Part shown: positions 2,041 to 27,324 of the stretch, one piece after another
How the letters are laid out: the number at the start of each line of letters is the position of its first letter
Numbering within the stretch: position 1 is the stretch's first letter
From: Macrostomum lignano
Lineage: Eukaryota
DNA length: 64,000 bases
Assembly (NCBI GenBank): GCA_002269645.1
Contig: NIVC01000677.1
Location: forward strand, 186,001 to 250,000
Direction: 5' to 3'
Position numbers and translations under genes: made by a program
The notes under the pieces: model-generated
Seen by the model: the letters and a program-made list of their open reading frames with translations, nothing else
Told to the model about the DNA's origin: nothing
Database searches by the model: none

Positions 2041-2054
2041 CCCATGCATGTAGC

Positions 2055-8267: not shown

Positions 8268-11200
8268 CTAAGACTCCAGCGAGTCCACAATTTTCTGCAG
8301 GGATTCTACAGCTGCCTTCGCTGTCGGCCTGGAGTCTGGAGTGCCGCTCCAGCAGCTCTCCATCAGGTCCCACAGCTGGTCGGACATGTTGGGCAGCCGC
8401 GTCGGCCTGCAGTCCAGGGCGCCGGCGAGCAGGATGGCTCCGACACTGGGCATGATCTCGACGTACTCCGGGTGGCGCTTTCCCGTGCCTTCGCTGTGGA
8501 TTTAAATCAATGGCATCTCGCATCAATGGCTCGAGAATCTCTGCTTGCTCGTCCGCTACCTCAGGGCTACCGGAAGAGTGATCACCCACCTCTTGGACTC
8601 TCCAGGGCGACTGCGCTGCAAGATATCTGGCATTCCAACTGTCTGCAGCGGCCCCTCAGGCAGTGTAGAATTCCTCACGAGCTATTACCCCCTAATAATA
8701 ATTTACCCCATTACCTAATAACATCGCGCAATCTTTTTTGAACTTACAAAAGATACCAAAGAGCGATTCCAAGACTGAAGACGTCCGCGCTCGTGTGGTA
8801 GCTCTCGCCTCGGACCAGCTCAGGCGCAAGGTAGATTGGCGTTCCAACTAAGGTTCGGTTTACAAAGCCTGTACTCTTCACGAGTCCGAAGTCCGACAGC
8901 TTCACTTGTCTTAAATCTTCACTCACCTTAGGGTTTGTAAGGGTTTGTGGGCTGTTAAAATCATAAAAAACAGTCGGTCCACTCTCAAAAAAATGCTTAC
9001 GAGGACGTTGGCGAGTTTCACGTCTCTGTGAATCAGCTCGCTCGAGTGAAGGAACTGAAGGGCCTTCGCCAGCTCCAAGCCGATCTTCAGGCGCTGTCGA
9101 ACAGGCAGCCTGTGGCGCTGCATCAGATTCCAGGCGTCGCAGCACATCAGCTCCATGTAGATCTCTACTGTCCATCGCTTCTCATCAGGTTTGCTTTTGT
9201 GGAGCCTCACGCCGACTACGTGCACGAGATTATCATGCTCGAGAACGCTGGAATGTAACAACTTCTCATGCTATTATGAGAACTAGAAGTTATGCGATCG
9301 AAATATGTGCACTATATCTACTCAAGTATAGTAACTTACCTGCTGTGGTACACTTCCGTTGCGATATCGTCAAGACTAGGCTCGTCGGATACGATTCTCT
9401 TGGCCGCTAGCGCTGGCTCTCCGCTCTCGTTCAAAACTCGGAACACCTCACCTTGAGCTCCGGATCCGAGATTTCCTTCCGTGTCGATTCGGAACCCGCG
9501 GTACTTGTACTTGGAGATAACATCCATCGTAAGCATATGCAGTCGAGCAACTCGCGGGTATAGAGTCTTGATCTCGGATCGCTCCTTCTCGGTCAGCTTC
9601 ATACAGCTTTCGACTAGTTGCTCCGATGAAGCAATGTTGTCAAGAAACTCTCTGTGCTGCTTTTCGAACCATTCTTTCAGCGAGGTGATGAGGCACTCGA
9701 CAAGATTTTCTTTGCTGATTGTACCTGAAACAAATGAAGACAAACAGCTGATTGTGCAATGGTAGCCTAGATAATTTAATTGAAAAGCGAGTAGTTCGAC
9801 CGTTTATACCATAGAAAATGACAATGTCTGACATACAAAATATATTACTAACCTAGATACTTTTCTGCCTGATATTCCTTCCACTTTTGATCCTGGATCG
9901 GTGTGGAGATTGACAGAACGAGACCTGGATTTCTTACCATCTGTCTCACGAAATGCTTTATCCTGAATATTATAACATTCAAAGGACCCAATAAGAAGTC
10001 CTTTGACGACAACGAGTAGCCTTCGAGAAGCGTCTTCTTTAACACCTGGTACGCGGGCGTCTGTTCCACATCCTTTTCGTACTCTGCACTTTCTGCTTTA
10101 AGTCGTCGAATTCCTGTAGGCACAATCTCAGAGCTTTAAGTCGTCGAATTCCTGTAGGCACAATCTCAGATTTGAGGAAGTCGCAGAATGACGCAATATT
10201 CTGTCGTTGATGAGAGCATGAATCTCATCGACGCACTTCTTCTCAATGTCTTTCTGAGACATATCGGCTGAAATCACCGATTCCGAGTACTTCAGCGCTC
10301 TGACTTCGTCGAGAATGAGCGGCTTTCTTTCGGCGAAGAATAGACCTGCTTGTCTCAACAGCTCGTCTCGATTTTTCTCCACGATGCTCTTAGACTGCTG
10401 GTGGATCTCCTGCTCCAGGCTCTTGATTTGGTAGAGCGCCTTCTTCTTGCGCAAGTTCGACTCTTTGATGTTGGTGGCCTTGTCCATGAACAGTGTGAGA
10501 ATCTCGCTTTGAATGCGCCTCAGGCCACCACCAGAACTCACGATGAGGTTTCGAAATTGATCCTGAGCGAACTTGAGAATTCTCGTCTTGACCTCCTCGA
10601 ATCGTCTGACCCACTTTGAGTTCTCCATCTCCTTGAGAGCCTCAGGGTCGAGCTTGTTCTTCTTGATCATGAGTTCCTTTTTGCGACGGAATCGCCTCAC
10701 TTCCCAACACGAGACGCAAAGGAACTTGTTGCATGTGTCTCTGGTTTCGTTCGGGCTGATGTAGCCGAGACGCTGCAGCTTGGAGAAGACGCGCTCAGCC
10801 TTCTCTTCTTCAATCTCCTGCGCTGGTCGATTGGCTTCCTGCTCTGTGTCTTTCGAGACATCCATCTTAGTGACAAGATAGAACACCTCAGCGCCAAGCA
10901 CCGTTTTCTTAATCGTGGTTAAGTCCTTTTGGACCTGCAGTTTTAATATTCAATGCAAGAATATTGTCAAAGTTTATATTTACAGTTTTATCGTACTCAT
11001 ATATACACAGAATTCTTCTTAGGTGTTAGCTACTAGAAGCGAAAAAAGTAATAACTTCTACTTTGAATATACCAGCTCAGACAACAGCTAACTTTTTACT
11101 TTTTGGATACATATGCTCTCTCTGTTGACTATACTATGCAGTAGAAAACAGTAAAGAATGGGAAGTAGAAAAACACGTCGGGTTTTCCCTGAATGCTTCC

Positions 11201-12445
11201 ATTTCAATAACCAGCATCGATTGTCCTACGGTAGTACCGCACTGCAAGTGTCAGTTCATTGATAGAATTATGCCAGTTTGTAATGGAACTCACGGCAACG
11301 GTGATGCCCGAGTTCGAGTCGATGACGTAGATGATGATCGGTAGAAACGAGTCGATCGCCCCCAGCGTCAGCGAGTCCAGAGACGAGTTCTCGTTCAGTC
11401 CTGGCGAGTCGATGATGTCGATGCCGTGTCGCAGGAACTCGCACTTGATGCCGGCCTCGACAGTCGAGCTGATGAGCTCATCATTCTCGCGGTCCTCGTC
11501 CTTCAGCTTGACGAGGTCCTCCTCGATTGTCGGCTTCTCGAGGTACTGGACGTCTCCGATCTGCTCGCCGGTCTTGGATCGCACGAGCACGTAGATTCGG
11601 TCGGAGTAGGTGAGCCGGGTGACTCGGGCGGTGCACGGGGACTGCGACTGGGCCACGAAGGTGCCGCCTGCGAATATCGAGCGCATTTTTTGTTATGAAA
11701 TTATACATTGTCCTGGTTTTACTGGCTCAAAGATACTCATCAGCTACCGGATTTTCTTTCAAGTGAAATCTAAGAATCAAATCTAAAGTGTGGACAGGGA
11801 TTTCTAGAAGTTTGTCTTCAATTTGAGGAGAATATTATTCTCCAAATAAAATAGTATTTTTTTTAATGAAGATTTGGGCATTAATGCTTGTCAACGCATT
11901 GGGAAAAATTTTGCTAGTTTAGCTCAGATAATCTGTGTTCTTATTGGGTGAATATCCTTTGAGAGGAAAATTAACATTCATCTATATCTTGTATACTACT
12001 GGAAGTAGACAACAATTTGCTGTTCCTTCTTAGCAAATCTAAATGGATTTTATCTAAAAAACATTGAAGTGATGATAAAAGATATTGACAGCACTTGAAT
12101 TTTTTAGCAGAAGTTAAACAGCTGCTCACCAAGCAGTTCATTGATGAAGGAGCTCTTGCCCGACTTGGTCTGGCCAACAATGATGATGCACGGCTTGCTG
12201 CTGTCACTGGAACCCGTCTGGTTGCCCCTGTACAGCTGGTTGACCTTTTGCCTCACGGGTTCAAACTTTAGCGACTCTTGCAACTTTGCTGAGAATTCCG
12301 GAGACAAAGCCTTGGAAAAGCTCTCCGTTAACAGTCTCTGTGTAGTGTCCAGGTGCTCTTTGATCAGGTCCCGGTTGCTTCGGAATTCGGCAATCTCCTC
12401 GTCCAGAAAGCCGCTCGGCTGCGCCTCCGCTTGCGAGATGGCCAT
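8268..12445 (-). CDS. DSTYK-like dynamin-family GTPase-protein kinase, paralog A (exon 3 frameshifted: pseudogene, truncated allele or assembly error)
   Basis: Exons 12445-12130, 11667-11294, 10934-9853, 9724-9340, 9247-9001, 8926-8748, 8493-8268, all GT-AG with the same intron phases as B and C. GTPase motifs GQTKSGKS, DSPG, TKMD. Kinase motifs GSGAQG, AAK, HRDVKLAN, DFG, GTPIYLAPE. The frame is broken at 10089-10197. Confidence 0.85.
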
Positions 12446-14694
12446 GGCGGCTTTTCTGCAGCTTCAAGTCTCAGTTTGGGTCGCGCAGAGGCTCCTGGCA
12501 CTTCTTGTAGCCTGGAGAGGCAGTGCTTTGTATTCGTGCCCTCGTACGCAGCCAAAAGTGTCTGCCTACTCCCTGGCCACACCAGTGTACGCTTGGCTGG
12601 CTGGGCCGCGAAGGCTTCTCTCTCTATTGGCTCGTATTTGAACTCCGCTTCTGCACGGCAGATTGCTGAGGCAGCCGTTTGCAGTGCAGTTCATTCCGAA
12701 AAAGAAAACAAGCCTTCCAATTCTCTCTCACTCTATTAGCCTGTGCGTTTTTGCTGCGTATCTGTGCGCACCATCTTTGCGATACCCATTTGCCGAACGA
12801 GCTCTCTAGGTGTGCGCTGCAGTGCTGCGCTATCCTACCCTATCTCTGATGTTAACTGCCCAGCAGTTGTTGGAGTAACATTTATAGCTTTATTTAAAGC
12901 TGATGTCAGTGCCTTAGCAAGCATTTAATTCAACATGCAAGCAGTTCTTTTAGAGCAAAGTAGAACTTTGAATAAAAATATTGAGAATTTTTATCCTCGT
13001 CTTCTTATAAGATAGACCTTTTATAATACAAACAATAGTCATTATTAGATGCATATATTACAAGAAATGTAAATTTAATGGACGCCATAATGCAATTTTC
13101 CCATCAACCTGTTTTTAGCTTCACCTTCTGTTTTTGAGATCGGCTAAAGGCTGCTGTTTTGAGTTCGCATCAAAACTAGAATTTATCTAAACGCGGTGCA
13201 TTTAGACTCAGCTCGTTTTAGAATTTTTTCCTTTCCGAACACTAGATGGAACGGCACTTGCTGAGCGCAATATGCAACTGCTTCCGGAGCTCGGGAAGTT
13301 CCGGTTGGCTAAATACTGCAGCTATTTCCCCTGTTCCGCTGGCAATCAGTCTCTCGACAGGGGAGAGTGGAGCCTGGCTCTGTGAGTCAGCTTTAGCGGA
13401 AGCCCGTTCGCATGGCAGGGAGATGGGTGCGATATGGACAGCGAGCCATTCTCGGGATACAAAGTTTTTCTAAGCCAAGCCGATAGCCGAACTGCTGTAT
13501 AGAATAGGGAATGACACACGGAGTCGTCGCTGGGGCGGATGTCAGCCATTTCGAGGCTAATTAGCATAATTATTCCACAAATCGTTCGGCCATTTTAGCG
13601 CGCAGGCGCGAGCAGAAATCGCCTTAACTTTCGCTCCCAACTGACTCTGGTAGGGGGGGGGGACACGCGTGGGAGCGGGAGAAGGGAAGAGATATCGGGC
13701 CAGAGTCAGGGCCCGCCCAGCCGACCTCCAATTGGGATGGTGATCATCGGGCGATGGATCGCTTCCGCTTTGGGGAGGACGGTTTCGGTGAAAGCAGTTA
13801 TCTGGGCAACATGTGGCCGCGCAGGGGCGCGCAGTCCTCTTGGGCCTGGATTACGGGAGCCAAATCCCCCCCCCCCTATCTCTAGTCCCACACGCTGCAG
13901 TGTAGAATAAGTTGAATAAGAAGAGCCCTGGGGGATGAGAGGAAGCCGCCAAGCCGCCAATAGCAGCTGGCCCGCGAGGCTATAAAAGATGGAGAATCGA
14001 GCTGGGTTGGGACTCGCGCTTGTCAACTGCTGAGACCGTCTGTCGCGCCGGAATCATGTTTACTTGGACAGAGCGTAAGTTTTTATATCGGCGTAGCATA
14101 CTTGTATTATTCAAAACAGGCAGTGGCTGACCTTGATATGTCAAGTTTTTCTGTTCGGCCGTCGCCGACACAGGCCTTATAGTAGGTGCGGGAGTCGTTG
14201 AGACCCCCATCTAAAAGCGCTAGATACCAGAGAATCTTGGCACATCAGACTGCAGCTACGTTACTCTACGGAATTCATTTTCCTATGCATATACTCGATG
14301 CTTACTACTGGCAGTAAGGATACATATTTCGATCGCTGCTACCTATAATCCCGGGGATGATTTCTGTTTGTCATTGCTATATGCCTTCTAACGGCTCTAT
14401 AGCTTCATTTATAATTTAAACAGGAAATGCAGTTTTCAAGCTTCGCTCTGCATCTGTAAGTTTTTGAATTGAAGTGGAGCAACAAATTGGCACCTGCAGC
14501 AGGTGTGCAGCTGAGAGGCCAGTCAAATACCGATGGCAGGCTTTGATAGGCACTGCCCCCGCTAACTGCCCGATAAGGTGCAGTTTCGCTGTAAACAATC
14601 CATCAGGCTGCAGGTTAATAGATGCTTAGAAAAATTGTTCAAATCTTGCTCGCTCGGCAAGAAGTTTGTTATCCGCGCAGCAGCCGAAGTCAAG

Positions 14695-17600
14695 ATGGCT
14701 CAGGCCAGCTCCAATGCCGTCCAGGAGGACCGGGACTTCCTGTCCAGGGAGATCAAGCGATTCTACGCCAATCGGGACCAGCTCAGAAAGACTCTGCAAG
14801 AGACACAGGAGTTCGTCGAGACCAGGTTCGCGCAGAATCTGTCAGCCGAGTTCTCCAGTCTGGTCATGCAGAACCTGCAGTTGGACAGCGTGTGGCAGCT
14901 TGTCAACCGGCTCTTCAACGGGCACCGCGGCGGCTCCGATGGCAGCAGCCGGCCGTGCATCATCATCGCTGGCCAGACCAAGTCCGGCAAGAGCTCCTTC
15001 ATTAACGAGCTGCTAGGTTGGTAGTCAAAGCAGCCGGACCTTAATGTCCTGGTCTTGATTTTGTTAAAATCAAAAAATCGTTTGTATCTTTACGAATCTC
15101 TTCATTCTTATTCTCGTTTTTGGGCTCAGTTTTTAACAAAAAATTAATAATAATTGATTACACCTGGCCGAACGGGCAGATGTGCAACCGACAGCTCAGC
15201 CGCAGCTATTGCGCGGCGCATCTGAAGGCTGCGTACGGCTGTTCAGTCCAAGGACTGGGGGGTCGCCACACACAGCCTCAATTACCCCAGCTAATGCTGG
15301 CACCCATTTTACAGCTGGGTGAACTGAAGCAATGCAGAGTTAAGTGTCTTGGTCAAGGTCAAAAATTGTTCCGAGTGGGTCGAGAATCGAACCCCCGACC
15401 ATTCAGTCGCGAGTCCAACACTCTAACCACCAGGCTACAACCCCAACTACAACTTAACCTGTTTTTCTTCCTATTTACACTATAGAATTACAAAATGTTA
15501 GCTAATCCCAAAGTTTCTTATTTTAATAAACATTTTTGTTAAAAATTAACAAAATAAAATAATCGAATATGCAGGGTGGCCCAGGTAACGCGCCTGATTT
15601 AAAGTAAAACGTTAATAACTTTTGTTATTTGCAACCAACGCGCCTGACAAAAGTTATTAACGTTTTAAATCAGGCACGTTACGTGGGCCACCCTGTATAA
15701 ATTGTGCACCCAACAAGCGCAATTCGCGTTAGTCTTCTGTTATCCAAGCCAGTTCTACAAGAAAATGAATAATTACTGCCTAGTATTTGGCTCTAATGTT
15801 ACTATGCTCGCATTCATTACTAAAACTGTATTGCTATTTAATAGACTTTTGACAGCACAGAGACTTTTCGGATAAGACATGACAAACTGCACAGTGTATT
15901 TGTAAATTCCCTGGATGCCCCTAGGCGGCACCTTCGTGGCCCAGTCGCAGTCCCCGTGCACCGCCCGAGTCACCCGGCTCACCTACTCCGACCGAATCTA
16001 CGTGCTCGTGCGATCCAAGACCGGCGAGCAGATCGGAGACGTCCAGTACCTCGAGAAGCCGACAATCGAGGAGGACCTCGTCAAGCTGAAGGACGAGGAC
16101 CGCGAGAATGATGAGCTCATCAGCTCGACTGTCGAGGCCGGCATCAAGTGCGAGTTCCTGCGACACGGCATCGACATCATCGACTCGCCAGGACTGAACG
16201 AGAACTCGTCTCTGGACTCGCTGACGCTGGGGGCGATCGACTCGTTTCTACCGATCATCATCTACGTCATCGACTCGAATTCAGGCGTTACAGTTGCTGT
16301 AAGAATGTTTCGTGATGTACTTTGATTGCATCGCATATCAAGCTGTTTACCTAGTAATTTTTCTCAACCCCTAGGTTCAGAAGGATCTGCAAACCATTCA
16401 GAAAACAGCTTCGGGAGCAGAAATTCTCTATCTAATCACCAAGATGGATGTCGCGGATCACCTTGCCGCTGAGATGGGTCGTGAGGTGGCAGAGATGGAA
16501 GCTGAAAAGGCCGATCATGTTTTCTCCAAGCTTCAGCGCCTTGGATATATTAGCAAGGATGCCACGAGGCAGTCGTGCAGGAAGTTCTTGTGCGTCTCCT
16601 GCTGGGAGGTGCGGCGATTCAGGCGTAAGAAGGAGATGATTGAGAAGAAGATGAAAAAGTCAAAGACTGCCGAATCCGGTGAGAAGCTGATGTCTGATCT
16701 CGTGAAGGAAATGGAGAACTCAAAATGGGTCCGGCAATTCGAAGAAGTAAAGCGACGAATCCTTCAATTTGCTCAAGATCAGTTCAAAAACCTGATTGTT
16801 GGAGCCGGAAGTAGCCTCAGGGCTGTGCACTGCCAGATTCTCACAATGTTCATGGACAAGGCCCACGACATTAAAGAGTCGAACCAGCGCAAGAAGAAGG
16901 CGCTCTACCAAATCAAGAGCCTGGAGCATGAGATCCACCAGCAGTCTAAGAGCATCGTGGAGCGACACCGCGGCGAGTTCCTGGCTCAGGCAAACAGATT
17001 TTTCGCAGAGAAGAAGCCTCTAATTCTCGATGAGGTGCGATCGATGAGCTATTCGGATTCGGTTATTTCTGAGGGCATGTCTCAGAGGGACATTGAGAAG
17101 AAGTGCATAGAAGAGATTCACACTCTCATTAATGACAGAATAATAGCAACTTTCAGCGACTTCTTGAGGGATAATGTTTTGAGAACTTGCTTCACAGACT
17201 TCGATGATCTTAAGGAAAAGGTTGCAGAGTACGAGAAGGACGTAGAGCAGACACCAGCCTACCAGGTGCTGAAGAAGACACTGCTCGAGGGCTACTCCTT
17301 GTCGTCCAAAGCAATCGTGCGCGGATCTGTGACCTGCTTCATTCGAAACATCGGAAGCACTTTGCGGGCACTGTTGAAGCATCCGGACATCTTCTTGGGC
17401 AAGGCTGTCCAGCACCACAAGTGGAAGGAGCATCAAGCTAGTCAATACCTTAGTAAGTCTTGCACCTTTATGCGCGTACACCTTTTTGAATGCGAACACG
17501 CCCAAATTTATTTTCTTTACAACGTCTAAATTTCAGAAAACATTGACAGAGAAAAGCTTGTCGCCTGTCTTGTATCCAGCATTGGCGAGTGGTTCGACAA

Positions 17601-19377
17601 GAGGCACTCCGACTTTTTGCACTCGATGAGCTACTCGGAAGTGCTCGTTGAGAAGTCGTATCGAATGACTGACCGCGAGCGCAAGGAAATCATCAAACTG
17701 TCGCCGATTGTGGCTCTCCTGCACATGAACGCCTTTGCCATCATCACTCGATACAAGTTTCGCAATCACCGGCTGGACCTGGACAACTGTCTGGGCTCTG
17801 GGGCCCAGGGCCGAGTCTACACAGTACTCTCGCCAACCGGAGAGCCCGTGATGGCAGCCAAGAAGATTGTCACCAACCGGGCCGGGCTGGAGGAAATCGC
17901 GGCCGAGGCCTACTACAGCAGGTGTGCGGGGATTTGAAATGCACTGTTCGTATTACAGCAGCAGAATAGCTCGGGCCAAACTACCTGGGTTCGATTACGA
18001 GTCCAGCCACAGTAATTTGGGGTTCGAGCATGGAAATTGTGACCCGAGGCGGGGACTTGACTTGCCGATTTTTGTCCATGAGGACCAATAACCAAGATAC
18101 TCAAGGGCTGAGCTGTTGTTGAGTTATAACTAGCTGCTTGCCTCCTAGCTAGCTGCGGGTGGACTGTCTTATTCGGCCAAACAGCCCCTCCATGCAATGC
18201 ATTAGCCTCAAGCGAAATCCTAGAGCTAAAATCTGAAGTCTGACTGTCATCACCCTTGCAGCGTTCTCGAGCATCCGAACATCGTTCGGGTTGTTGGCAC
18301 TGTGCTGCTTGAGAATGCCAAGCATAATGGCCAGTGGTCCGTTGAGTTATACATGGAGCTGATGCACTGCGACGCCCTCACCCTGATGGAGCAGCAGCGA
18401 CTGAGTTTGGCTAAAAGACTCTGGCTTGGGTTGCAGATTTCCAAGGCGCTGGAGTTTCTCCACTCCAGCCAGCTGATTCACCGCGATGTGAAACTGGCAA
18501 ACCTTCTGGTAAGAAGTACTGTTTAAAAGTGCCAAAAAGGTTCGATGGAATTAGGTTTAATTGATTCTTGGTGTGGTTAAAGAAAGTTGTGTTGCTATTC
18601 AACTTTTTGCGCATCTGTGCAGCTTGGCAGACTTTTAGTTGCCAACGGCAACTGCAAAATGGCCGAATGCCAGTGTTTTCCAACTATCTCTCAATGTGTT
18701 CTTACTGCCACTTGCAGGTAAACTCAGAGGCAACGGTAGCCAAGCTCTCAGACTTCGGCTTGCTAAAAGGCCAGGGTCTCGTTGGTCACACTCTGGTCGG
18801 CACTCCAATCTACTTGTCGCCGGAGCTGGTGCGGCGCGAGAACTACGGGGTCAGCACAGACATTTTTAGTTTAGGCATCGCCCTGTGGTATCTTGTGTAA
18901 GTTGGGTGTTCGACTGAGTCTACAGTATCAAAGTCTCATGACTCGAGCTAAGTTAGAGTCTCAGATGCACTTTTGTTTATTAAAAAAATTCGTTTGGTTC
19001 GTTCGGTGAAATACTACGGGATATCAGCACTCCCGACATACTACTGGATGATCCAGCATATTTCAACGTTCATAGATACACGTAAAGGATTAAAATACGA
19101 CTTAAACTTCCTTGAAGTCATTTTCCTCAAAAAACACTGCAGCGAGGGCAGCGGCCAGCATCATCCTGACTACGTGACCAACCTGAAGACCGTCGAAGAG
19201 GTGCTCGCTGCCACCTCGGAGCGCGGCTGCCGGCCTAACCGGCTGCCTGAAGCCTCCGACCAGCTGTGGCAGCTCATGGTCCGCTGCTGGGACGAGACGC
19301 CGGCCAAGCGACCGACAGCTGGGCAAGTTTCGGCCAGCCTGGAGGCTATCATAAAAGCACTGGAAGCTGGCCAGTGA
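14695..19377 (+). CDS. DSTYK-like dynamin-family GTPase-protein kinase, paralog B (intact, about 939 aa)
   Basis: Exons 14695-15016, 15925-16298, 16375-17452, 17537-17921, 18262-18508, 18718-18896, 19143-19377 sum to 2820 nt in frame. G1 GQTKSGKS, G3 DSPG, G4 TKMD. Kinase GSGAQG, AAKK, HRDVKLAN, DFG, GTPIYLSPE. C-terminal RP.RLP..SDQLWQLM..CW resembles DSTYK. Confidence 0.9.
15150..15444 (-). mobile_element. tRNA-derived CORE-like SINE (family 1) in intron 1 of paralog B
   Basis: Minus strand has a GGGGTTGTAGCCTGGTGGTTAGAG...GGTTCGATT head, then CCTTGACCAAGACACTTAACTCTGCATTGCTTCAGTTCACCCAGCTGTAAAATGGG, which resembles the MIR CORE. Further copies at 24331, 27325 and 29406. Confidence 0.85.
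15572..15695. mobile_element. 124-bp palindromic Tc1/mariner-type MITE
   Basis: TIR CAGGGTGGCCCA.GTAACG.GCCTGATTTAAA with its inverse ending CCACCCTG|TA. The element is almost entirely a hairpin. Confidence 0.8.
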
Positions 19378-20300
19378 CTTTACAACCAAGGCTGTGCCTA
19401 CCTTGGATTCGCTACTTATAAAGTCGTGATTTTTGACCAATAAAATAATAAACTGCATTGTTATTTAGTTGTATGAGTAGAGAATATTTTTGAAGCAATC
19501 TTGGCGTGCTGCATGCTGATGCGAATGGAAACTTGAGCACCCGACCAAACTGACTCCTATCTAGTAACAAATTCTGAGACAGTCCATCCCATCCGGGTCC
19601 AACGGTCCATCCTTTGGGCTCATAATAAATAATTCTTGACTGAGAATGCCAGTCTTAGTCCAATAAGAGTCGAATAATACGTAGCCTAATGGTCCAAAAC
19701 ATACTTCACTACAGTCAGGACCTTTTTACCCTTCGTATGTTTTCAAATCGTTCGGCTCGGCAGGAACAGCTAAAATCCATCTAACTACGAGTGTAGCGTG
19801 AATTGCATGATGAAGCAAAATTTGTTTTGCTGAGACCGTAAATTTAAGTTCCACTGAAAACTCTAGAAGTGTATCAAGTAACGCTGCAGTGCATACTTGC
19901 AATGTCATTACTTTCTTTGCTCATATTTTTCGTTTTTAAAGTCGATGATTTTCATTACAATTTCGTTGAAATTATTTTTCACTAGTATTGTTTGAAATAT
20001 TTGATGAAATTGCTATTCAGACTGCGTCCAAGATGACGCTCCGATGGATAGCACTGCGATAAAGAGTTTATTTCAATATATTATGAATAATGAGCTAAGT
20101 TGGACGCAGAGCAATGAATATTTCGCGTCAAACTTTCTTTTGCAGTCTTTTACGCTATGTAGTAATAAACCTACAAGCCTACAAGCTTCAAGTTGCTTGC
20201 CTGAGATTGCTGAATCCTGTTTACTAAGGAGCTATACTGTAGATAAGATATGTGTAGTATATACGTTACCATTTCGAGTCGAATCTCTTTGCAGAGGAAA

Positions 20301-20330
20301 GAGAGAGAGAGAGAGAGACGGAGAGAGAGA
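20301..20330. repeat. (GA)n microsatellite
   Basis: GAGAGAGA run read directly. Confidence 0.9.
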
Positions 20331-20514
20331 GGGTCGGAGCTGGTGTGCGTTGAGTTGCACAGAACACATCTTGGTGTACACTATAGCTACCTGTCTCCGA
20401 ACCCTTTCTCTCAATCTGACAAGCTAACAGCAGCAACAATATCTGCCCCATACAGTGTACGGCAATTTTATGCATTATCTCTCTCACCTGCCTGCACAGA
20501 TCGACAAGCAGCAA

Positions 20515-23500
20515 ATGGCACAGCTATCAAACTATCTCGATCAGTTTTTGCTTAATCGTCAGAGGCTGGCCAATGCGCTTGATGAAGTGCGTTGTCTAGT
20601 GGAAGAGGCGAGGCAGATAGTAGCTGCGACATCAGCTAAGCGGTTGGAGGCGGTTGCGAGCGAGGTGGAGAAACTGCTGAGGCTGAGGGGGCGGCGTGGC
20701 AGACAAGGCGATGCGGAGTGTCGCGTCTGCTTGTTGATTGTCGGCCAGACTAAGGCCGGCAAGAGCAGCTTCATCAATGAGCTGCTGGGTGAGGAGACTG
20801 GGTACTGAGTGCTTATTGGGGCAAAGTTAATATCCTAGTTCAGCACAAAACTAAAGTATAGATACGCTCGTAAAAGAACAGCTACGTAGGTACCGTAAGG
20901 ACCCTGTCCATAGAAGAAATGTCAGCTCGAGCACCGAGTGCAATTGATAACTTGCCAGACCAGTCGGCTTGATGGGAACACAGAGAAATCCCATCCTAGA
21001 AACGCCGATTTCAGCGACACAATTCTGAGCGAATTCTGAGACTGGGAGCTCAAGGGAGGGACCTGACTGCGGTGTCCCAGCGATTTCAGTCGACCTGTTC
21101 CGAGCTTTACTTTTGTCTCCGTATCGGTTAAATCGCCTTTCATAACTTTTAAAGAATATTGATTCTGAAACACGCTACATCAATCCTCTGTCCAGGCCAG
21201 CAGGTGTTGGCCCAGTCGCAGCATCCGTGCACAAGCCAAGTGGTGCGGATCGTGCACTCAGCGGAGCCCTTCGACAGTCCCATTGAAGATCCCGAAGCCA
21301 ATGGCGAGCTCTCGCCGGCGGTCATCGGGCGGCCCAGCGAGTTTCTTCTGGCTAGCGGCCTGGATCTGGTGGACACGCCGGGCCTCAATGAGAACGCGCG
21401 ATTGGACGAGCTCACATTGAGTGCGGTGGATGCCTTCCTGCCTCTGGTTGTCTACGTTATCAATGCCAACAATGGCGTGAGCCGCATGGTGAGGGTTCTG
21501 TTTCTGTTCACATTTCCACTAAAATAACTACGCTAAAGTCACAAGCTGCAAATTGCGAGTCTATTTCAGTAATTTACTCTCGATTTAAACCCACAGGTCG
21601 AAGCCGACATTGTCAATCTGCAGACCAGGGTAGGCGGCCCGGACAAGTTATTTTACCTGGCCACGCACATGGATATTGATGATGGCGACATCTCGGCCGG
21701 GTGCGGCCGCACCAGAGAGACACTGGAGCGAGAGAAGCTACAGCGCCTGCTCGCGGGACTCCGGCGGTTAGGCTGCATCATCGAACCGGAATCTGGGAAG
21801 CCAGTGGATTATGGCAAAAATCAGTATCATAATCAGCACAGTAGCCAGCAGGTATCAGAGCCGCCATGTTCGGATCAATTTTGCTGCATTTCCAGCCGCA
21901 TCGTGGCCACAGTTAGACGGCGCCACCGACGCCAGCAGCTCCGCATGAAGCAGCTGACGATAGCTAGCGATGACGAGGCCCGCTGGCTGGAGGCCTTCCA
22001 GTTGGCGAAGTCGTCGCTTTCTTCATTCGCGAAACGTCGTCTGACTGAACTTCCGCTAGAGGCAGCCACCAGCCTCCGTCGAGCCCTGCTGGATTACTTG
22101 CACAAGGACCTGGATGAGGCGGCCTCCTTGGCTAGCGAGGAGGCCTGCTACAGGCGGCGACTGACTCTTCTGGACGCCGGGCACGCGGCGGTTTGCCTTC
22201 TAGCCGACTCAGAGTCCGCGGCATCCGGTGCAGCGACCGCACGCAATCTGGTTCGATGGCTGACTGCAGCACTGAAGCAACGGTGTAGCGAGTTGGCGAA
22301 GGCATCAGCCGGAGCTGCGGAGTCTCCTTCCAGATTGGAGCTACTAGACAGTTTAACCGACCGGATTGGCGGCGACTTCGACTTCGCTCTGCCTCGACTG
22401 GCCGACTGTTTCCAGCGCGGCGTGTCGCTGGCTAAGCAAGTTGAAGAAGCGGCTGGTGGCGAGGGCCCGCAGAAACTCGTGCCGGCCGCCACAGAAGGAT
22501 TCCGTGTGCCGGAGCGGAGCCTGCGGCGCCAATTGGCGGAACTGTTGCTTGATGATGGCTGCAAGCCGCCGAAAGGATTGTCAAGGCTGCGACTACGACC
22601 GAAGGTGCCATCGAGGGATGCAGATTTGAGACGGCTGAATGTGGAGGAGTTTCTTGGTGAGGAAGTGACAACTGTGTGTACTCAAAATTATTTAATAAAA
22701 GCACTCTGCCGTATTGTATAGTCAGTAAAACTCAGTATGCACTGTAATATTTTGGGTTTTTGAGCCTAAATAGCCAGTTCAGATTAGAACTGGCACCCAG
22801 AGTAGGAGTTTGCTTGGAAAATGGGATGGAAGCTATCTGATAGCATCTAATATCTGAGCAAAGTACAATGTAACCAACTCATACGTTTAAAGTAATTTTT
22901 TTAGCATATCGCTGAAAAGGAACTGAAAACTGCTAGAAAGCCAGCACTGATGCAGATCACTGCTACTCAACCGCAGGAAAGCTCAAACTGAATAAACTGG
23001 CCGACCGAGTCCTGCAGGACCTTCGCCGCTGGTTTGAAGAGCTGCACAGAGGAATTCTGGCGGCAGTGCAGGCCGCTGAAGACCGGGTCCAGCTCGACCT
23101 TCGAACAGCGATGGACAGACGGCGTCTCAGTCTGGCTCTGCTGCCGCTATGCTTGAAGATAAGTCTACAGCTGGACAGCGTCGCGACCGAGTACGGAGAA
23201 CTGCAGCTCTGCGGAGGCGAATCCGACGAATGGAAGCTGGTGGCATCCGGGTCTCAAGGCAGCAAGCTTTACCGCTGCGGCGGAGACCTGGCCGTCAAGG
23301 AGATGATGCTCAGCGACAGACAGCTGGGCGAGATTGCTCCCGGATTGCACGTCAGTCGGTAGGTGGCAATTTTCACTTGCCAATGCCTAGGCGGCCCATT
23401 TGACTTTATTAAAGCGCCTGAAACTCAGCTTTAAGTGCAGAATAAAGGCATGGACAGCTGAAGTACAGCTAAAAGGACCACCGTACACACTCTCAAGGTG

Positions 23501-25554
23501 TGAAAATTTCGCTACAAACCAGTGTTTTTTTACAAAATGCATCAGTGAGAAAGGAAGAAGGATAGATAGAAACATTTTGTTAGTGCAATAAATTACATCA
23601 TACCGAAAACTATATCAAATATCTGTAAATCTTAAACATCAAGCAACGCATTATCGCATACAAAATCCTCCATTTGTCATATTTAAAGAGTAAAACTCTG
23701 CATGCATACAGCATAAGTTGAACAAAGCAAGAAGGAAGCATAAAAATGGTAAAATAAACCTAATGAATTGACAAAAAAGAAAACTGTAATCTTTTGAATC
23801 CGGTATTGGCAAAATTCTCAGTGCTACTATCGTGATCCCGGAATTATGCCTGTATTTACGAGCACTTGTAAAAGATCAGAGGGTACTTAAATGTACTAAG
23901 TTCTTGATGTCTTGATAACTTTAAAAAATACGATCTACTTCGTGTATGAAATGATGTTAAAGCCACTTGAGCTTGCATATTTTTAGCGGACTGCGCGTTA
24001 AACGCGTCCGACTCTCGCCCCACGCGACCCCCGGTTCGATTCCGTGCGCGGCCAATTGCCTGGGGGTCGTCATGATGGCCAACCCCCGCAGAGAGTGTAC
24101 ATGCCTGACGATTAGAAAGTCAAAGGGCCGCTGTACACCCTGTGTTAGCGTGTGTATGAGTGGGCGCCTGCGTACAGTATGGGCGCGCTTGCATGTGCTC
24201 AGGACTCAGCGGGATGGGCAGAATCGTCTCAGCACTGGTTGTGTGGGACGATGTCGCCGAATTCATTGCGCCGGGGTGCCCCCAGCCCCCCAACGAGTAT
24301 TTAGATGTATTTATTTGAGGCATAGGCAAGGGGGTTGTAGCCTAGTGGTTAGAGCGCCGGATTCGCGACTGAAAGGTCGGGGGTTCGATTCTTAACCACT
24401 CGGAACATTTTGTGTCCTTGAGAGAGACACAACTCTGCAGTACTTCAGTTCACCCAGCTGTAAATTCTTTAAAATCAGCATTAGCTGGGGTAACTGAGGG
24501 TGTGCGAGGCGACCCCCAATCTTTGTACTGAACAGCCGTACGCAGTCCTCAGATGCTCCGCGCAATAGCTGCGGCTGAGCTGTCGGTTGCGCATATGGCC
24601 CAAAAGGCAGGTGTAATAACTTATTAATTAATATTATTAAATTATAGGCAGCAACTGATCAGAACCTAAATTTAACTGTTTATCAAATTTTCTCAACGCT
24701 TTCAACGATTCCTCATTGGAATGAGCTAACAAATTTTGCTTTACTTCTAATTTCCAAATACAGTGAAATGAACGAGAATCTAGTCCACATCGCTGGCCTG
24801 CGGTTGTACAGACTGACCGCACCTGATGTCTGGAGACTGCAGTTGTACATGCCATTCATGGCTGACGGCCGCAATCTGCTGGATTTCCTGGCCCTGCAAC
24901 CCTCGCTGCGAAAGCGGCTGGCCGTTGGCTTGGCAACAGCGGACGCGCTGGCGAAGCTGCACTCGGAGAGCCGACTGGCGCACGGAAATCTGCACGCCGC
25001 CAATGTGTTTGTAAGCAGGAAGCGGGGAGGTCGGGCAAGGAACAGTTGAAGTTGATTGCTTTGAGTTTTTGAAGGCAAAATGAAGTTTTTGTTGGAAAAC
25101 CATCTCAGGTGATTCGGTCGGGCACCGAGTCGGCGGTGGTGAAGCTGTCCGACCTCGGCCAGCAATTGTTGCCAGACAAGGAGTTGCCAGATGGCTCTAA
25201 ACCACCAGGCTGCATGCTCTTCAGTCAGTTGGTTAGCCAAGATGTCTGCTGTTTGGGACGGATTCTACAGAGTCTGACGTGAGTTCGTCACCGTTGCATG
25301 TGATGATTTCCTTCGATGCTATTAGGCTTGGTAACGTTTCATTTTCATTTTTAATCAGATCTGGTCCTGCAGTACACGCAGTGCCAGTGGACTTCGAGCT
25401 GACAGCAGAAGCATCAGCTGATCTGGACCGCCTTCTGCTGGAGTGCCAGCCGGATCCCCTGGCACCAGCGGGCTACACGGAGTCGAGCTGCAGCCTGACA
25501 GCTGGCCAAGTAGCTAACCGGTTGCGAGCCCTGCTGCCAACGCCTGCGGACTGA
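20515..25554 (+). CDS. DSTYK-like GTPase-pseudokinase, paralog C (about 873 aa)
   Basis: Exons 20515-20788, 21196-21488, 21597-22656, 22977-23358, 24764-25010, 25109-25278, 25359-25554 sum to 2622 nt in frame, with the same intron phases as A and B. GTPase motifs GQTKAGKS, DTPG, THMD. In the kinase, HRD is replaced by HGN, DFG by DLG, the alphaC Glu is replaced and there is no APE motif. Confidence 0.85.
23984..24318 (+). mobile_element. tRNA-derived SINE (family 2)
   Basis: A-box-like TAGCGGACTGCG and B-box GGTTCGATTCC. The central ATGGCCAACCCC...GTGTACATGCCT.ACGAT...AGGGCCGCTGTACAC block is shared with 43215-43540. Confidence 0.7.
24331..24640 (+). mobile_element. CORE-like SINE (family 1), full length
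   Basis: Same head, core and 3' region as 15150-15444; ends in an AT-rich tail. Confidence 0.85.
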
Positions 25555-25639: not shown

Positions 25640-26340
25640 AATAAGATTCTTCGTGTCCTCCCTGTCCCCACCTCGTGTCCTCCCTGTCCCCACATCGTGT
25701 CCTCCCTGTCCCCACCTCGTGTCCTCCCTGTCCCCACCTCGTGTCCTCCCTGTCCCCACCTCGTGTCCTCCCTGTCCCCACCTCGTGTCCTCCCTGTCCC
25801 CACCTCGTGTCCTCTCTGTCCCCACATCGTGTCCTCCCTGTCCCCACCTCGTGTCCTCTCTGTCCCCACCTCGTGTCTTCCCTATCCCCACCGATCGTGT
25901 CCTCTCCATCTCACCGTGTCCTCTCCGTCCCACCCTGTGTCCTCTCCGTCCCACCCTGTGTCCTCTCCGTCCCACCCTGTGTCCTCTCCGTCCCACCCTG
26001 TGTCCTCTCCGTCCCACCCTGTGTCCTCTCCGTCCCACCCTGTGTCCTCTCCGTCCCACCCTGTGTCCTCTCCGTCCCACCCTGTGTCCTCTCCGTCCCA
26101 CCCTGTGTCCTCTCCGTCCCACCCTGTGTCCTCTCCGTCCCACCCTGTGTCCTCTCCGTCCCACCCTGTGTCCTCTCCGTCCCACCCTGTGTCCTCTCCG
26201 TCCCACCCTGTGTCCTCTCCGTCCCACCCTGTGTCCTCTCCGTCCCACCCTGTGTCCTCTCCGTCCCACCCTGTGTCCTCTCCGTCCCACCCTGTGTCCT
26301 CTCCGTCCCAACCTGTGTCCTCCCTGTCCCCTCGTGTCCT
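25640..26340. repeat. Pyrimidine-rich minisatellite: 22-bp units (CTCGTGTCCTCCCTGTCCCCAC) followed by about 18 perfect 21-bp units (CCTGTGTCCTCTCCGTCCCAC)
   Basis: Read directly; accounts for all ORFs called between 25558 and 26395. Confidence 0.95.
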
Positions 26341-27324
26341 CCTTTTGACACGAAGTACAGCGTATTCTATGCTATGCCAAAATAAAGTAATTTAGATGTG
26401 CTTTCATTTTTAGTTTCAATTATCGTGCAGCCAAGTTTTCTCTGTTATATGTACTTTTATGCGCGAACTCTGTGGCTTGTGACGTCATAGTCATAGAGTA
26501 TTCATTCAACGTCGTGCTTACCTCACAAAAGCTTCTCGTGCAACCTTAATTGAGACTATATGAAGACAGCCGATGCTGGAAAATGACTTCATCAGATAGA
26601 AAAACTCGTTCACCGTGATCTACAAAATGTTTTCTGTATAGAAAATAGTCATGGCCTGCTCAGCAGGCCAAAGCCGCAAGCTACGGTTATGTAGACTTAT
26701 TTTTCGAAACAGCATCGTAATAATTCGCAAGCCATAGACCATGAGCTATGGCCTGCAGAGCAGGCCACCCGCATCCTCGGGGTTAAACAGTTGACAATGC
26801 AAGAATCAGGTTGGTAGCTCTGTATGGCATAAGCTACTGCAAAGCAATAATTGGAACTGGACAACCAAGAGCATGGGTGTGGCAGCCTTTTGTGTATCGT
26901 ATGTAGAGCTTATCGAAATGTTTTCGTCGTATCTTCCCTTTTCTAATGTCTCTAAGACGGAGAATTCTTCCTAATCAACTAGATGGCTTCCCAATGCAGT
27001 CGCAGTCGAGCACGCGCCCAGGCAAAGCAATGGCAGGACTGCAGGTCTGCAGCTCAGCCGCGCCCAAAATCCCAGTTCACGGACGTACAAAGCGGCACGC
27101 GAGCCGCCTGAGAAGGGTGGATCAATTCGGTTCATCTGCAGCGTCGACAGCTGAATTCGAACCGTTGAAAGACTCGAATAGAAGAAGACAATCTCTAGAA
27201 AAGCTAATTAGCATTGGTTGATTACTGAATTTTTGCAGTGCGTACCAATGCGTGTCGTTCAAACTTGACTGTATCGGATTCAGGCATAAGTGTTAATGGA
27301 TTTTACCGTATAGATTAATGGACA

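What the first reader, a model, noticed from the sequence alone, without database searches (positions are those of the whole stretch)
8268..25554. Cluster of three dynamin-like GTPase-kinase fusion genes: a divergent active pair plus a pseudokinase partner
Seen: three paralogs with the same 7-exon structure and intron phases (1,0,1,2,0,2), each encoding a P-loop GTPase, a long helical region and a C-terminal kinase. A and B are head-to-head with starts 2.25 kb apart, and C begins 1.1 kb after B. Established: dynamin/mitofusin/BDLP-type GTPases use G1 GxxxxGKS, G3 DxPG and G4 TKxD and oligomerise in a GTP-dependent way. GTPase-kinase fusions (ROCO/LRRK) and clustered kinase/pseudokinase pairs are recurrent designs in innate-immune signalling. 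Inference: a lineage-expanded DSTYK-like module in which GTP-driven assembly on membranes switches the kinases, with a dead-kinase subunit as sensor or regulator. I know of no description of such a locus but could not search.
Basis: partly seen in the sequence, partly recalled or inferred. Interest (0 to 1): 0.85.

Follow-up and report, generated by a model that had tools for sequence, protein, structure and literature searches.

The report
Flatworm cluster of dynamin-like GTPase–kinase genes
Three neighbouring flatworm genes each fuse a mitofusin/bacterial-dynamin-type GTPase to a protein kinase; they are divergent relatives of the human disease kinase DSTYK that keep the GTPase motifs vertebrate DSTYK has lost, which suggests what DSTYK's long uncharacterised half once was.

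Summary
The window is Macrostomum lignano DNA (contig NIVC01000677.1). All have seven exons with intron phases 1,0,1,2,0,2. Each encodes a P-loop GTPase, a roughly 400-residue helical stalk and a C-terminal kinase-like domain.

The N-terminal 660 residues match Pfam Dynamin_N. Their AlphaFold model finds Nostoc BDLP first, then IniA, mitofusins, other bacterial dynamin-like proteins and Fzo1.

The proteins are collinear with true DSTYK over their whole length (hhalign 98.8%, E 9e-17). They are not its orthologs. They form a Macrostomum-specific clade within a "DSTYK-like" group found in nemerteans, brachiopods, hemichordates, amphioxus and Nematostella. That group keeps the G1–G4 motifs; the vertebrate DSTYK sequences examined have lost them.

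- B is intact and looks catalytically competent in both domains.
- C keeps G1–G3 but is kinase-dead (HGN for HRD, no activation segment).
- A is frame-broken in exon 3 in this copy, with a stop at codon 499. A 98%-identical second locus carries an intact A.

Control of the kinase by GTP-driven assembly, and any immune role, are inferred, not shown. The genes are already in public annotation, but I found no paper linking DSTYK to a dynamin fold.

The parts
8268..12445 (-). Gene A: DSTYK-like dynamin-type GTPase–kinase with 7 exons (12445-12130, 11667-11294, 10934-9853, 9724-9340, 9247-9001, 8926-8748, 8493-8268). The sequence is of the active type, but the reading frame is broken in exon 3 in this copy.
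   Evidence: Splice-site model and translation. It is 100% identical to P0004 outside the lesion. NCBI annotates only a 374-aa kinase fragment here.
10088..10198 (-). Frame-disrupting lesion in A exon 3. There is a 1-bp deletion (~10198), a 36-nt tandem-duplicated segment 10170-10135 replacing 6 nt, and a 1-bp deletion (~10088). The premature TGA is at 10130-10128 (codon 499).
   Evidence: DNA alignments to B and to the intact copy L001. If both 1-bp deletions are restored, the frame reads through with SEIVPTGIRRLK in place of DG. The independent model P0006 shares a frameshift at the first site.
12446..14694 (.). 2.25-kb divergent intergenic region between the A and B start codons. It is a presumed bidirectional promoter region.
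   Evidence: Coordinates of the two start codons. Promoter function was not tested.
14695..19377 (+). Gene B: an intact 939-aa dynamin-type GTPase, helical stalk and kinase with 7 exons (14695-15016, 15925-16298, 16375-17452, 17537-17921, 18262-18508, 18718-18896, 19143-19377).
   Evidence: Translation is 100% identical to BOX15_Mlig014911g1. Pfam gives Dynamin_N 89-239 and Pkinase 675-925. All G1-G4 motifs and the kinase motifs (K700, HRD 793-795, DFG 814-816) are present. AF2 pLDDT is 79.
15925..16279 (+). Gene-conversion tract in B exon 2. These 355 nt are 100% identical to A 11667-11313. The tract starts at the first base of the exon. It encodes the segment running from switch I to G3.
   Evidence: dS is 0.09 here and saturated (>1) in all other exons. 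The flanking introns cannot be aligned.
11313..11667 (-). Partner of the conversion tract, in A exon 2.
20515..25554 (+). Gene C: an 873-aa dynamin-type GTPase, stalk and pseudokinase with 7 exons (20515-20788, 21196-21488, 21597-22656, 22977-23358, 24764-25010, 25109-25278, 25359-25554).
   Evidence: Model agrees with the C portions of UniRef P0002 and P0003 and with the 877-aa NCBI gene. G1 is GQTKAGKS, G2 PCT, G3 DTPG, G4 THMD. The kinase motifs are HGN, DLG, no APE segment and αC Glu replaced by Gly. Pfam finds no kinase. BLASTP against the B kinase gives 32% identity, E 1e-11.
20475..20500 (+). Polypyrimidine tract and AG acceptor (20499|20500), 15 nt upstream of the C start codon. Annotated B–C read-through models use it. 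It is a candidate spliced-leader trans-splice acceptor.
   Evidence: The junction ...RPTAGQ|IDKQQMAQLS in P0002 and P0003 maps to a donor at 19326|19327 and an acceptor at 20499|20500. The NCBI C model starts at 20503.

Best explanation
SHOWN. The region is a cluster of three old paralogs in the flatworm Macrostomum lignano. They belong to a GTPase-competent, 'DSTYK-like' branch of the DSTYK kinase family.

Each protein has four parts in order:
1. an N-terminal helical segment;
2. a dynamin-superfamily G domain of the BDLP/mitofusin type;
3. a roughly 400-residue helical neck and trunk;
4. a tyrosine-kinase-like protein kinase domain. It is joined directly to the last stalk helix (modelled helix 596-665 runs into kinase strand β1 at residue 670).

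B is intact, with complete G1-G4 and kinase catalytic motifs. A is of the same type, but its frame is broken in this copy of the locus; an intact A exists at a 98%-identical second locus. C keeps G1-G3, has His for Lys in G4, and has lost the kinase catalytic residues.

INFERRED mechanism. Like BDLP and the mitofusins, the N-terminal module binds GTP, dimerises through its G domains and changes hinge conformation or oligomerises, probably on a membrane. Because the kinase sits on the last stalk helix, assembly would bring kinase domains together. That would switch them on by trans-autophosphorylation or allostery.

C would join as a non-catalytic heterotypic partner. The precedents are the paired bacterial DLP1/DLP2 proteins and MFN1/MFN2. 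C would then tune or scaffold the B kinase. Annotated B–C read-through models suggest that B and C are co-transcribed. Concerted evolution of the switch I-to-G3 exon between A and B would keep their G domains mutually compatible.

The biological setting (organelle or membrane surveillance, or innate defence) is not known.
For: Identity and architecture:
- Pfam Dynamin_N and Pkinase hits.
- A profile of the N-terminal region against PDB sequences finds BDLP 2j68 at 8e-16, then Fzo1 and a Campylobacter DLP.
- The AF2 model (pLDDT 79) against PDB by Foldseek finds BDLP at 1e-15, then IniA, MFN2, SynDLP, Cj-DLP1/2, MFN1 and Fzo1.
- G1, G2 (P118, T120), G3 and G4 residues are invariant across the DSTYK-like homologs.
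- Kinase motif table.
- The full-length model shows a continuous stalk-to-kinase connection.

Family:
- The nearest relatives are named DSTYK or DSTYK-like in six phyla.
- hhalign against mammalian DSTYK gives 98.8%, E 9e-17, over 502 columns.
- BLASTP of the N-terminal region gives E 3e-21, and the kinase domain gives E 1e-37 to 1e-41 against DSTYK versus 1e-20 against PLK4.

Selection and expression:
- A versus B gives dN about 0.28 with saturated dS.
- B and C have intact ORFs and conserved splice sites.
- Public gene models contain B and C, and B–C fusions.
- Operons and spliced-leader trans-splicing are common in this species (PMC8629364).

Heterotypic logic:
- Mixed arrays of kinase-positive and kinase-undetectable members recur. 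Saccoglossus has five such genes in 23 kb, including a head-to-head pair.
- Predicted active and pseudokinase members share a contig or scaffold in Lingula and Branchiostoma.
- Bacterial DLP genes are typically paired in operons (abstract of PMC6104087, listed).
Against: - No biochemical or expression data were available. GTP binding, dimerisation, membrane binding, kinase activity and a B–C interaction are all untested.
- No transmembrane segment was found. The only candidate for a BDLP-like paddle is a low-confidence amphipathic loop at about residues 545-580.
- The interdomain geometry comes from a shallow 12-sequence alignment.
- The B–C intergenic distance is about 1.1 kb, with AATAAA signals 60-70 nt after the B stop. 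That is at the edge of the operon criterion used for this species. The fused models could be annotation artefacts.
- A is broken here, and C has a G4 substitution, so some members may be decaying.
- The tree is neighbour-joining on corrected p-distances. Long-branch effects on the placement of C cannot be excluded.
Confidence: 0.55

Rival explanations
1. The causal direction is reversed. These proteins are chiefly membrane-remodelling or tethering dynamin-like proteins (fusion, fission or repair of an organelle). The attached kinase regulates the remodeller itself, or marks local substrates, rather than being the output that the GTPase switches.
For: The whole BDLP-like neck and trunk is retained, not just a G domain. 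Canonical DSTYK phenotypes in the literature concern organelles. Examples are notochord vacuole fragmentation (PMC7012607), lysosome/mTORC1-TFEB (PMC6981171), autophagy and mitochondrial fitness (PMC9524203) and late endosomes (PMC11933320), all listed.
Against: No transmembrane anchor or clear paddle was found. In the vertebrate DSTYK sequences examined the kinase is the conserved part and the GTPase motifs are degenerate. That suggests the kinase is the indispensable output.
Confidence: 0.2
2. The cluster is an innate-immune sensor module. GTP-driven assembly on membranes activates the kinases, and the dead-kinase subunit C acts as the sensor or decoy.
For: Three features are typical of defence gene families: lineage-specific expansion, tandem arrays with frequent pseudogenisation, and repeated independent loss of kinase activity. 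They are seen. Vertebrate DSTYK has been reported to phosphorylate STING at late endosomes (PMC11933320). Other dynamin-superfamily proteins (GBP, IRG, Mx) are immune effectors (general knowledge).
Against: No expression or infection data exist for these genes, and no paper mentions their identifiers. dN/dS of about 0.2-0.3 between A and B indicates purifying rather than diversifying selection. Expansion could also reflect the duplicated M. lignano genome and ordinary tandem duplication.
Confidence: 0.15
3. This is a decaying duplicate cluster. Only B is functional. A (frame-broken) and C (kinase-dead, G4 variant) are relics with no partner role.
For: A has a premature stop at codon 499 here. 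The independent model P0006 is frameshifted at the same place. Pfam cannot recognise a kinase in C at all. In the second locus, L001, the B copy lacks exon 2.
Against: C keeps an 873-codon ORF across seven exons with all splice sites, and its G1-G3 motifs are intact although dS against B is saturated. That is not expected for a neutral relic. C is present in public gene models. An intact A exists (P0004). The single-base indels may be assembly errors, since L001 shows many of them.
Confidence: 0.15
4. The genes are ordinary DSTYK orthologs, and the apparent multiplicity comes only from the recent genome duplication or from retained haplotypes in M. lignano.
For: A second, 98%-identical copy of the whole locus exists (L001). 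Automated names call the proteins DSTYK.
Against: A, B and C differ from each other by 36-74% at the amino-acid level, with saturated dS, so they long pre-date the 98%-identical duplicate. Canonical DSTYK kinase domains are 60-70% identical from sponge to human, but B is only about 33% identical to them. In the tree, the flatworm genes sit with the GTPase-competent DSTYK-like proteins of other phyla, apart from canonical DSTYK.
Confidence: 0.02

Closest known systems
[quoted passage not shown]
   Same: The length and layout are the same: about 930 aa with the kinase at the C-terminus. The N-terminal ~550 residues are collinear and homologous (hhalign 98.8%, E 9e-17). The kinase domain is closer to DSTYK than to other kinases. 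Both C and vertebrate DSTYK have DLG in place of DFG.
   Different: They are not orthologs. Kinase identity is about 33%, against 60-70% among true orthologs. The flatworm proteins keep G1 GQTKSGKS, G3 DSPG and G4 TKMD. Vertebrate DSTYK has GQDCNVKC, VVAPC and VPKLE at those positions and gives no Dynamin_N hit. The flatworm genes are clustered and multi-copy, and one member is kinase-dead.
Bacterial dynamin-like protein BDLP (Nostoc punctiforme) and mitofusins/Fzo1
   Same: These are the best sequence and fold matches for residues ~1-660, covering the G domain and the helical neck and trunk. The G1-G4 motifs match, including the 'PCT' switch I threonine.
   Different: They have no C-terminal kinase. 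BDLP has a membrane paddle and mitofusins have transmembrane segments. Neither feature is evident here.
Paired bacterial DLPs (Campylobacter DLP1/DLP2) and the MFN1/MFN2 heterotypic pair
   Same: These are adjacent, co-expressed paralogous dynamin-like genes whose products act as hetero-oligomers (abstract of PMC6104087, listed). B and C are adjacent on the same strand and joined in annotated read-through models.
   Different: A B–C interaction is untested. The flatworm partners also differ in kinase competence.
ROCO proteins / LRRK1 and LRRK2
   Same: They share the design principle of a GTPase and a kinase in one polypeptide, with oligomerisation-linked regulation.
   Different: The GTPase class is different: ROC is Ras-like and comes with a COR domain. 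Here the Pfam Roc match is below threshold (E 0.012), no COR domain is found, and the fold is dynamin/BDLP. The fusions are independent.
Kinase/pseudokinase signalling pairs (for example RIPK3–MLKL)
   Same: An active kinase is encoded next to a catalytically dead paralog. The weak PDB matches of the C-terminal domain of C are all protein kinases, including MLKL.
   Different: There is no evidence that B phosphorylates or binds C. C is a full-length paralog of B, not a different effector.

Membership tests
Dynamin superfamily, BDLP/mitofusin clade | G1 P-loop GxxxxGK[ST] | tested here: met
   GQTKSGKS in A and B, GQTKAGKS in C. G93, G98, K99 and S100 are invariant among homologs.
Dynamin superfamily, BDLP/mitofusin clade | G2 switch I threonine | tested here: met
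   The 'PCT' motif (P118, T120) is invariant and aligns with the BDLP NPCTA motif.
Dynamin superfamily, BDLP/mitofusin clade | G3 DxxG | tested here: met
   DSPG in A and B, DTPG in C.
Dynamin superfamily, BDLP/mitofusin clade | G4 [NT]KxD | tested here: met
   TKMD in A and B. C has THMD (Lys replaced by His, Asp kept), so C only partly meets this feature.
Dynamin superfamily, BDLP/mitofusin clade | Pfam Dynamin_N above the gathering score | tested here: met
   B 68.7 bits, intact A (P0004) 70.8 bits, C 56.6 bits; the cut-off is 27.
Dynamin superfamily, BDLP/mitofusin clade | G domain embedded in helical neck and trunk bundles (BDLP-like fold) | tested here: met
   The AF2 model has pLDDT 79. 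Foldseek top hits are BDLP 2j69 and 2j68 (E 1e-15, about 720 aligned columns), then IniA, MFN1/2, SynDLP, Cj-DLP and Fzo1. TM-scores are low (0.3-0.5), as expected for hinged multi-domain proteins.
Dynamin superfamily, BDLP/mitofusin clade | Membrane-binding element (paddle or transmembrane segment) | tested here: inconclusive
   No convincing transmembrane segment was found. There is an amphipathic, low-pLDDT loop at about residues 545-580 at the stalk tip.
Dynamin superfamily, BDLP/mitofusin clade | GTP hydrolysis stimulated by G-domain dimerisation or assembly | not testable with these tools
   This needs biochemistry.
DSTYK family (broad sense) | C-terminal kinase domain closest to DSTYK kinases | tested here: met
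   The B kinase gives E 1e-37 to 1e-41 (about 33% identity) against fish, bird, insect and mite DSTYK, versus 1e-20 against PLK4. Public names for the closest relatives are DSTYK or DSTYK-like.
DSTYK family (broad sense) | Collinear homology of the ~640-residue non-kinase region | tested here: met
   hhalign 98.8%, E 9e-17, query 92-661 against DSTYK 109-638. BLASTP gives E 3e-21.
Canonical DSTYK orthogroup | Orthology: groups with DSTYK of other animals, kinase 60-70% identical, single copy | tested here: not met
   Kinase identity is about 33%. The tree places the genes in a flatworm-specific clade apart from vertebrate DSTYK. There are five or more paralog types in the species.
ROCO / LRRK | Ras-like ROC GTPase followed by a COR domain | tested here: not met
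   The Pfam Roc match is sub-threshold (E 0.012, 16 bits against a cut-off of 27), there is no COR hit, and the fold is dynamin-like.
Pseudokinase (gene C) | Loss of catalytic residues in a domain homologous to a kinase | tested here: met
   HRD is replaced by HGN, the catalytic-loop Lys by His, and the αC Glu by Gly. The activation segment and APE motif are missing. The β3 Lys is kept. Homology to the B kinase is 32% identity, E 1e-11.
Pseudokinase (gene C) | Retention of the bilobal kinase fold | not tested
   No structure was predicted for C. Pfam and PDB sequence searches give only marginal kinase hits.

The most novel reading that the evidence does not exclude
The DSTYK family began as a metazoan mechanochemical dynamin-like (BDLP/mitofusin-type) GTPase fused to a kinase. 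The invertebrate 'DSTYK-like' genes, including this flatworm trio, still work that way. In them, GTP-driven G-domain pairing of co-encoded active and kinase-dead subunits on an organelle membrane switches the kinase. Canonical DSTYK, the human CAKUT and SPG23 gene, would then be the pseudo-GTPase remnant of that machine. This would be a class of GTPase-gated kinase independent of ROCO/LRRK.
Probability: 0.3. Interest if true: 0.8.

Novelty: new variant of a known kind. Interest (0 to 1): 0.6.

Why it matters
DSTYK is a human disease gene, linked to urinary-tract malformation, spastic paraplegia SPG23 and scoliosis-like phenotypes in fish. None of the DSTYK papers I read or searched assigns a fold to its roughly 640-residue non-kinase region.

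The flatworm genes and their relatives in five other phyla show that this region is a full BDLP/mitofusin-type dynamin module. In these invertebrates it still carries every GTPase motif.

That gives a concrete and testable idea for how the family works: nucleotide- and assembly-dependent control of a kinase at membranes. It also fits the organelle-centred DSTYK phenotypes. M. lignano is a transgenic, RNAi-amenable model in which an intact version of the machine could be studied.

Clusters of active and kinase-dead members recur in a flatworm and in hemichordates. This suggests that heterotypic pairing is part of the design.

Tried and rejected
- **Word-indexed searches to reach vertebrate DSTYK.** Searches with B and with Saccoglossus P0056 never reached it, because too few 5-residue words are shared. 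I got there with a query typed from my memory of human DSTYK, and then used only the database sequences that came back.
- **Peng et al. 2006 ('Dusty protein kinases', PMC4277547).** The paper is not held in the library.
- **Expression data.** Searching the papers for Mlig014911, Mlig021056 and Mlig016260 gave no hits.
- **dN/dS between the two 98%-identical loci.** There are too few substitutions (B has 1 synonymous and 1 non-synonymous change in 1368 nt). The L001 copy is also riddled with single-base indels in the C exons, which look like assembly noise.
- **A cryptic small intron to rescue the A frame.** Rejected. The out-of-frame stretch is about 110 nt, and removing the duplicated segment alone does not restore the frame.
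- **ROCO/LRRK membership.** Rejected.
- **RNA genes.** Rfam and ARAGORN found nothing in the window.
- **Model coordinates.** They were not available to scripts. I could not measure the G-domain-to-kinase distance or map the paddle onto BDLP.

Full report
**Source and gene models.** The B protein is 100% identical to BOX15_Mlig014911g1 of the free-living flatworm Macrostomum lignano. It lies on contig NIVC01000677.1 of assembly GCA_002269645.1.

I rebuilt the three genes from ORF segments, tblastn and splice-site inspection.
- A is on the minus strand, 12445 to 8268.
- B is on the plus strand, 14695 to 19377, and encodes 939 aa.
- C is on the plus strand, 20515 to 25554, and encodes 873 aa.

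Each gene has seven exons with GT-AG introns and phases 1,0,1,2,0,2. Exon lengths are nearly the same in the three genes, while intron lengths differ freely. The A and B start codons are 2250 bp apart, head to head. C starts 1137 bp after the B stop.

Translating the spliced A exons gives a stop at codon 499. I aligned A exon 3 to B, and to a 98%-identical second copy of the locus (L001, contig NIVC01000921.1) that encodes the intact 926-aa protein P0004. The window has three lesions:
- a 1-bp deletion near 10198;
- a 36-nt tandem-duplicated segment (10170-10135) in place of 6 nt;
- a second 1-bp deletion near 10088.

NCBI's annotation of this contig accordingly calls only a 374-aa kinase fragment for A.

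Two caveats apply. The assembly has visible single-base indel noise, since the L001 copy shows five such indels in C exons 1-2. Also, restoring the two deleted bases in A gives an open frame with a 10-residue net insertion. On the other hand, the independent UniRef model P0006 is frameshifted at the same first site. Some real copies therefore probably carry the lesion.

The second locus is damaged in a reciprocal way. Its B copy lacks the segment corresponding to window 15784-16471, which holds exon 2 and the start of exon 3. It is annotated as a 653-aa kinase-only protein.

**What the N-terminal two-thirds is.** Pfam Dynamin_N scores 57-71 bits in the three proteins, against a cut-off of 27.

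A profile of the non-kinase region was searched against PDB sequences. It finds Nostoc BDLP (2j68) at 8e-16, then yeast Fzo1 and a Campylobacter DLP.

An AlphaFold2 model of B residues 1-662 has mean pLDDT 79 and pTM 0.60. It shows a G domain flanked by long helices. Foldseek against the PDB returns BDLP first (E 1e-15, about 720 aligned columns). IniA, MFN2, SynDLP, Cj-DLP1/2, MFN1 and Fzo1 follow, and only then Drp1, dynamin, OPA1 and Mx.

The motifs are as follows:

| Motif | A and B | C |
|---|---|---|
| G1 | GQTKSGKS | GQTKAGKS |
| G2 | PCT | PCT |
| G3 | DSPG | DTPG |
| G4 | TKMD | THMD |

These positions are invariant across the invertebrate homologs. I found no transmembrane segment. 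A low-confidence amphipathic loop at about residues 545-580 is the only candidate for a paddle.

**The kinase ends.** A (intact allele) and B have a glycine loop, the β3 lysine, the αC glutamate, HRDVKLAN, DFG and an APE-type segment. The nearest solved kinases are ABL, FAK and EGFR at about 1e-22, which fits a tyrosine-kinase-like dual-specificity enzyme.

C has HGNLHAAN and DLG, Gly for the αC Glu, and no activation segment. Pfam sees no kinase in C, and PDB sequence hits are marginal. Its C-terminal domain is nevertheless clearly homologous to the B kinase (32% identity, E 1e-11).

A fifth M. lignano type, P0009, is also kinase-dead (HQD, APFG) but has an A-like N-terminus. Loss of kinase activity has therefore happened at least twice in this species.

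The full-length B model has pLDDT 79 and pTM 0.68. Its last stalk helix (596-665) runs straight into kinase strand β1. No PDB entry matches both halves.

**Relation to DSTYK.** An exhaustive profile search with the non-kinase region gave 4440 hits at E ≤ 1e-3. The best full-length hits are 870-950 aa. [quoted passage not shown]

True DSTYK is very conserved in its kinase domain, at 60-70% identity to human in mites, insects, molluscs, annelids, an acoel and a sponge. It carries only kinase Pfam domains.

A profile-profile comparison of the flatworm non-kinase region with mammalian DSTYK gives 98.8% probability, E 9e-17, over 502 columns (92-661 against 109-638). Plain BLASTP gives E 3e-21. The two are therefore homologous along their whole length.

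In the vertebrate DSTYK sequences I aligned (human, marmot, a fish), the G motifs are degenerate: GQDCNVKC, VVAPC and VPKLE. Vertebrate DSTYK thus looks like a pseudo-GTPase fused to an active kinase. The flatworm genes look like a competent GTPase fused to an active or a dead kinase.

In a neighbour-joining tree of the non-kinase region, A, B, C, P0009 and P0010 are monophyletic (100/100 bootstraps). They sit with the kinase-active DSTYK-like proteins of other phyla. The predicted pseudokinase members of hemichordates, Lingula, amphioxus, nemerteans and Nematostella fall elsewhere. The pseudokinase state of C is therefore probably an independent, flatworm-specific loss. Given the crude method, that conclusion is tentative.

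**Age, selection and concerted evolution.** Between A and B, dS is saturated (>1) and dN is about 0.28. Both genes, including the kinase domain, have therefore been under purifying selection for a long time. C is much more diverged (dN 0.85).

Exon 2 is the striking exception. It is 100% identical between A and B for 355 nt, starting at the first base of the exon, with six differences in the last 19 nt. The flanking introns cannot be aligned, and the other exons are 56-69% identical. P0009 has the same exon-2 peptide.

This is a gene-conversion tract bounded by the edge of homology. It covers switch I through G3. I note, as speculation, that it would keep the G domains of the paralogs interchangeable if they pair.

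**Co-transcription of B and C.** The UniRef models P0002 and P0003 join B to C. The junction uses a donor inside the last B exon (19326|19327). The acceptor (20499|20500) lies behind a polypyrimidine tract, 15 nt upstream of the C start codon. NCBI's C model begins at 20503.

[quoted passage not shown] The published operon criterion is a repeat-adjusted spacing under 1 kb (PMC8629364). The roughly 1.1-kb B–C spacing is borderline. Co-transcription is plausible but not proven.

**Comparable loci elsewhere.** In Saccoglossus kowalevskii, five consecutive Dynamin_N genes occupy 23 kb, including a head-to-head pair. Three have detectable kinase domains and two do not.

Lingula and Branchiostoma each have a predicted active member and a predicted pseudokinase member on one contig or scaffold. 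Ptychodera and Glandiceps have five or more members on one chromosome.

In M. lignano the A-B-C locus is present at least twice at 98% identity. P0010 is a solitary paralog on another contig.

**Literature.** In the held library, no paper combines DSTYK with dynamin-like, mitofusin, BDLP, pseudoGTPase or a GTPase domain of its own. None combines it with an AlphaFold-based domain assignment either. Reviews of RIP kinases and the STING paper describe DSTYK only through its kinase domain. Published DSTYK phenotypes centre on vacuoles, lysosomes, autophagy, mitochondria and late endosomes. That is at least compatible with a dynamin-like ancestry.

**Verdict.** The locus is a lineage-specific cluster from a GTPase-competent branch of the DSTYK family. 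It has one intact, fully competent member (B), one kinase-dead member (C), and one member that is broken in this copy (A). The genes are already in public annotation, so they are not new as sequences. The architecture and its bearing on DSTYK appear undescribed. The proposed mechanism, an assembly-gated kinase with heterotypic partners, is a reasonable inference from the families involved. It remains untested, and the immune role is speculative.

Noticed in passing
window 15925-16279 (+) and 11667-11313 (-): Exon 2 of A and B is 100% identical for 355 nt, beginning exactly at the 3' splice site. The flanking introns cannot be aligned, and the other exons are only 56-69% identical. This is an exon-bounded gene-conversion tract covering switch I to G3. 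P0009 shares the same exon-2 peptide.
   Followed up: partly
window 19326-20500: Public models P0002 and P0003 splice from a donor inside the last B exon to an acceptor 15 nt upstream of the C start codon. This suggests B–C read-through transcription, or a spliced-leader acceptor in front of C.
   Followed up: partly
L001 (NIVC01000921.1), all 24152 bases: This is a second copy of the locus, about 98% identical. It has the opposite pattern of damage: A is intact, but the B copy lacks the segment corresponding to window 15784-16471 (exon 2 and the start of exon 3). C exons 1-2 carry several single-base indels that look like assembly noise.
   Followed up: partly
L004 (Saccoglossus kowalevskii GL016403.1) 19-23275: Five consecutive Dynamin_N genes lie within 23 kb, including a head-to-head pair. 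Three have a detectable kinase domain and two do not. Their spans (about 3.1-4.0 kb for 684-881 aa) suggest few or no introns, unlike the 7-exon flatworm genes.
   Followed up: no
protein P0009 (UniRef, M. lignano): A further paralog type has an A-like N-terminus, the shared exon-2 peptide and a second, independent dead kinase (HQD, APFG). Its genomic location was not found.
   Followed up: no
window 25653-26341: A 21-bp minisatellite (32 copies, 94% matches) lies about 100 bp after the C stop codon. It produces long spurious ORFs on both strands.
   Followed up: no
window 28167-28694 (+): An ORF with a C-type lectin domain (Pfam Lectin_C, 3.5e-08), probably one exon of a neighbouring gene.
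   Followed up: no
window 37293-44374 (+): A RecQ/BLM-like helicase gene (DEAD, Helicase_C, RecQ_Zn_bind, RQC and HRDC in successive ORFs). Between the ORF carrying the DEAD domain and the next one lie a Tc1/mariner (Sleeping-Beauty-like) transposase ORF (40608-41882) and a TTAGGG-like 21-bp minisatellite (39630-40345).
   Followed up: partly
window 50423-56829: A GC-rich (62-67%) non-LTR retrotransposon with an intact 1601-aa ORF (endonuclease, RT, RNase H) lies on the minus strand at 52024-56829. A separate RT fragment lies at 50423-51769 on the plus strand.
   Followed up: partly
window 1599-2961, 59968-60221, 60989-61708, 62416-62904: Several further minisatellite arrays with periods of 16-72 bp.
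   Followed up: no
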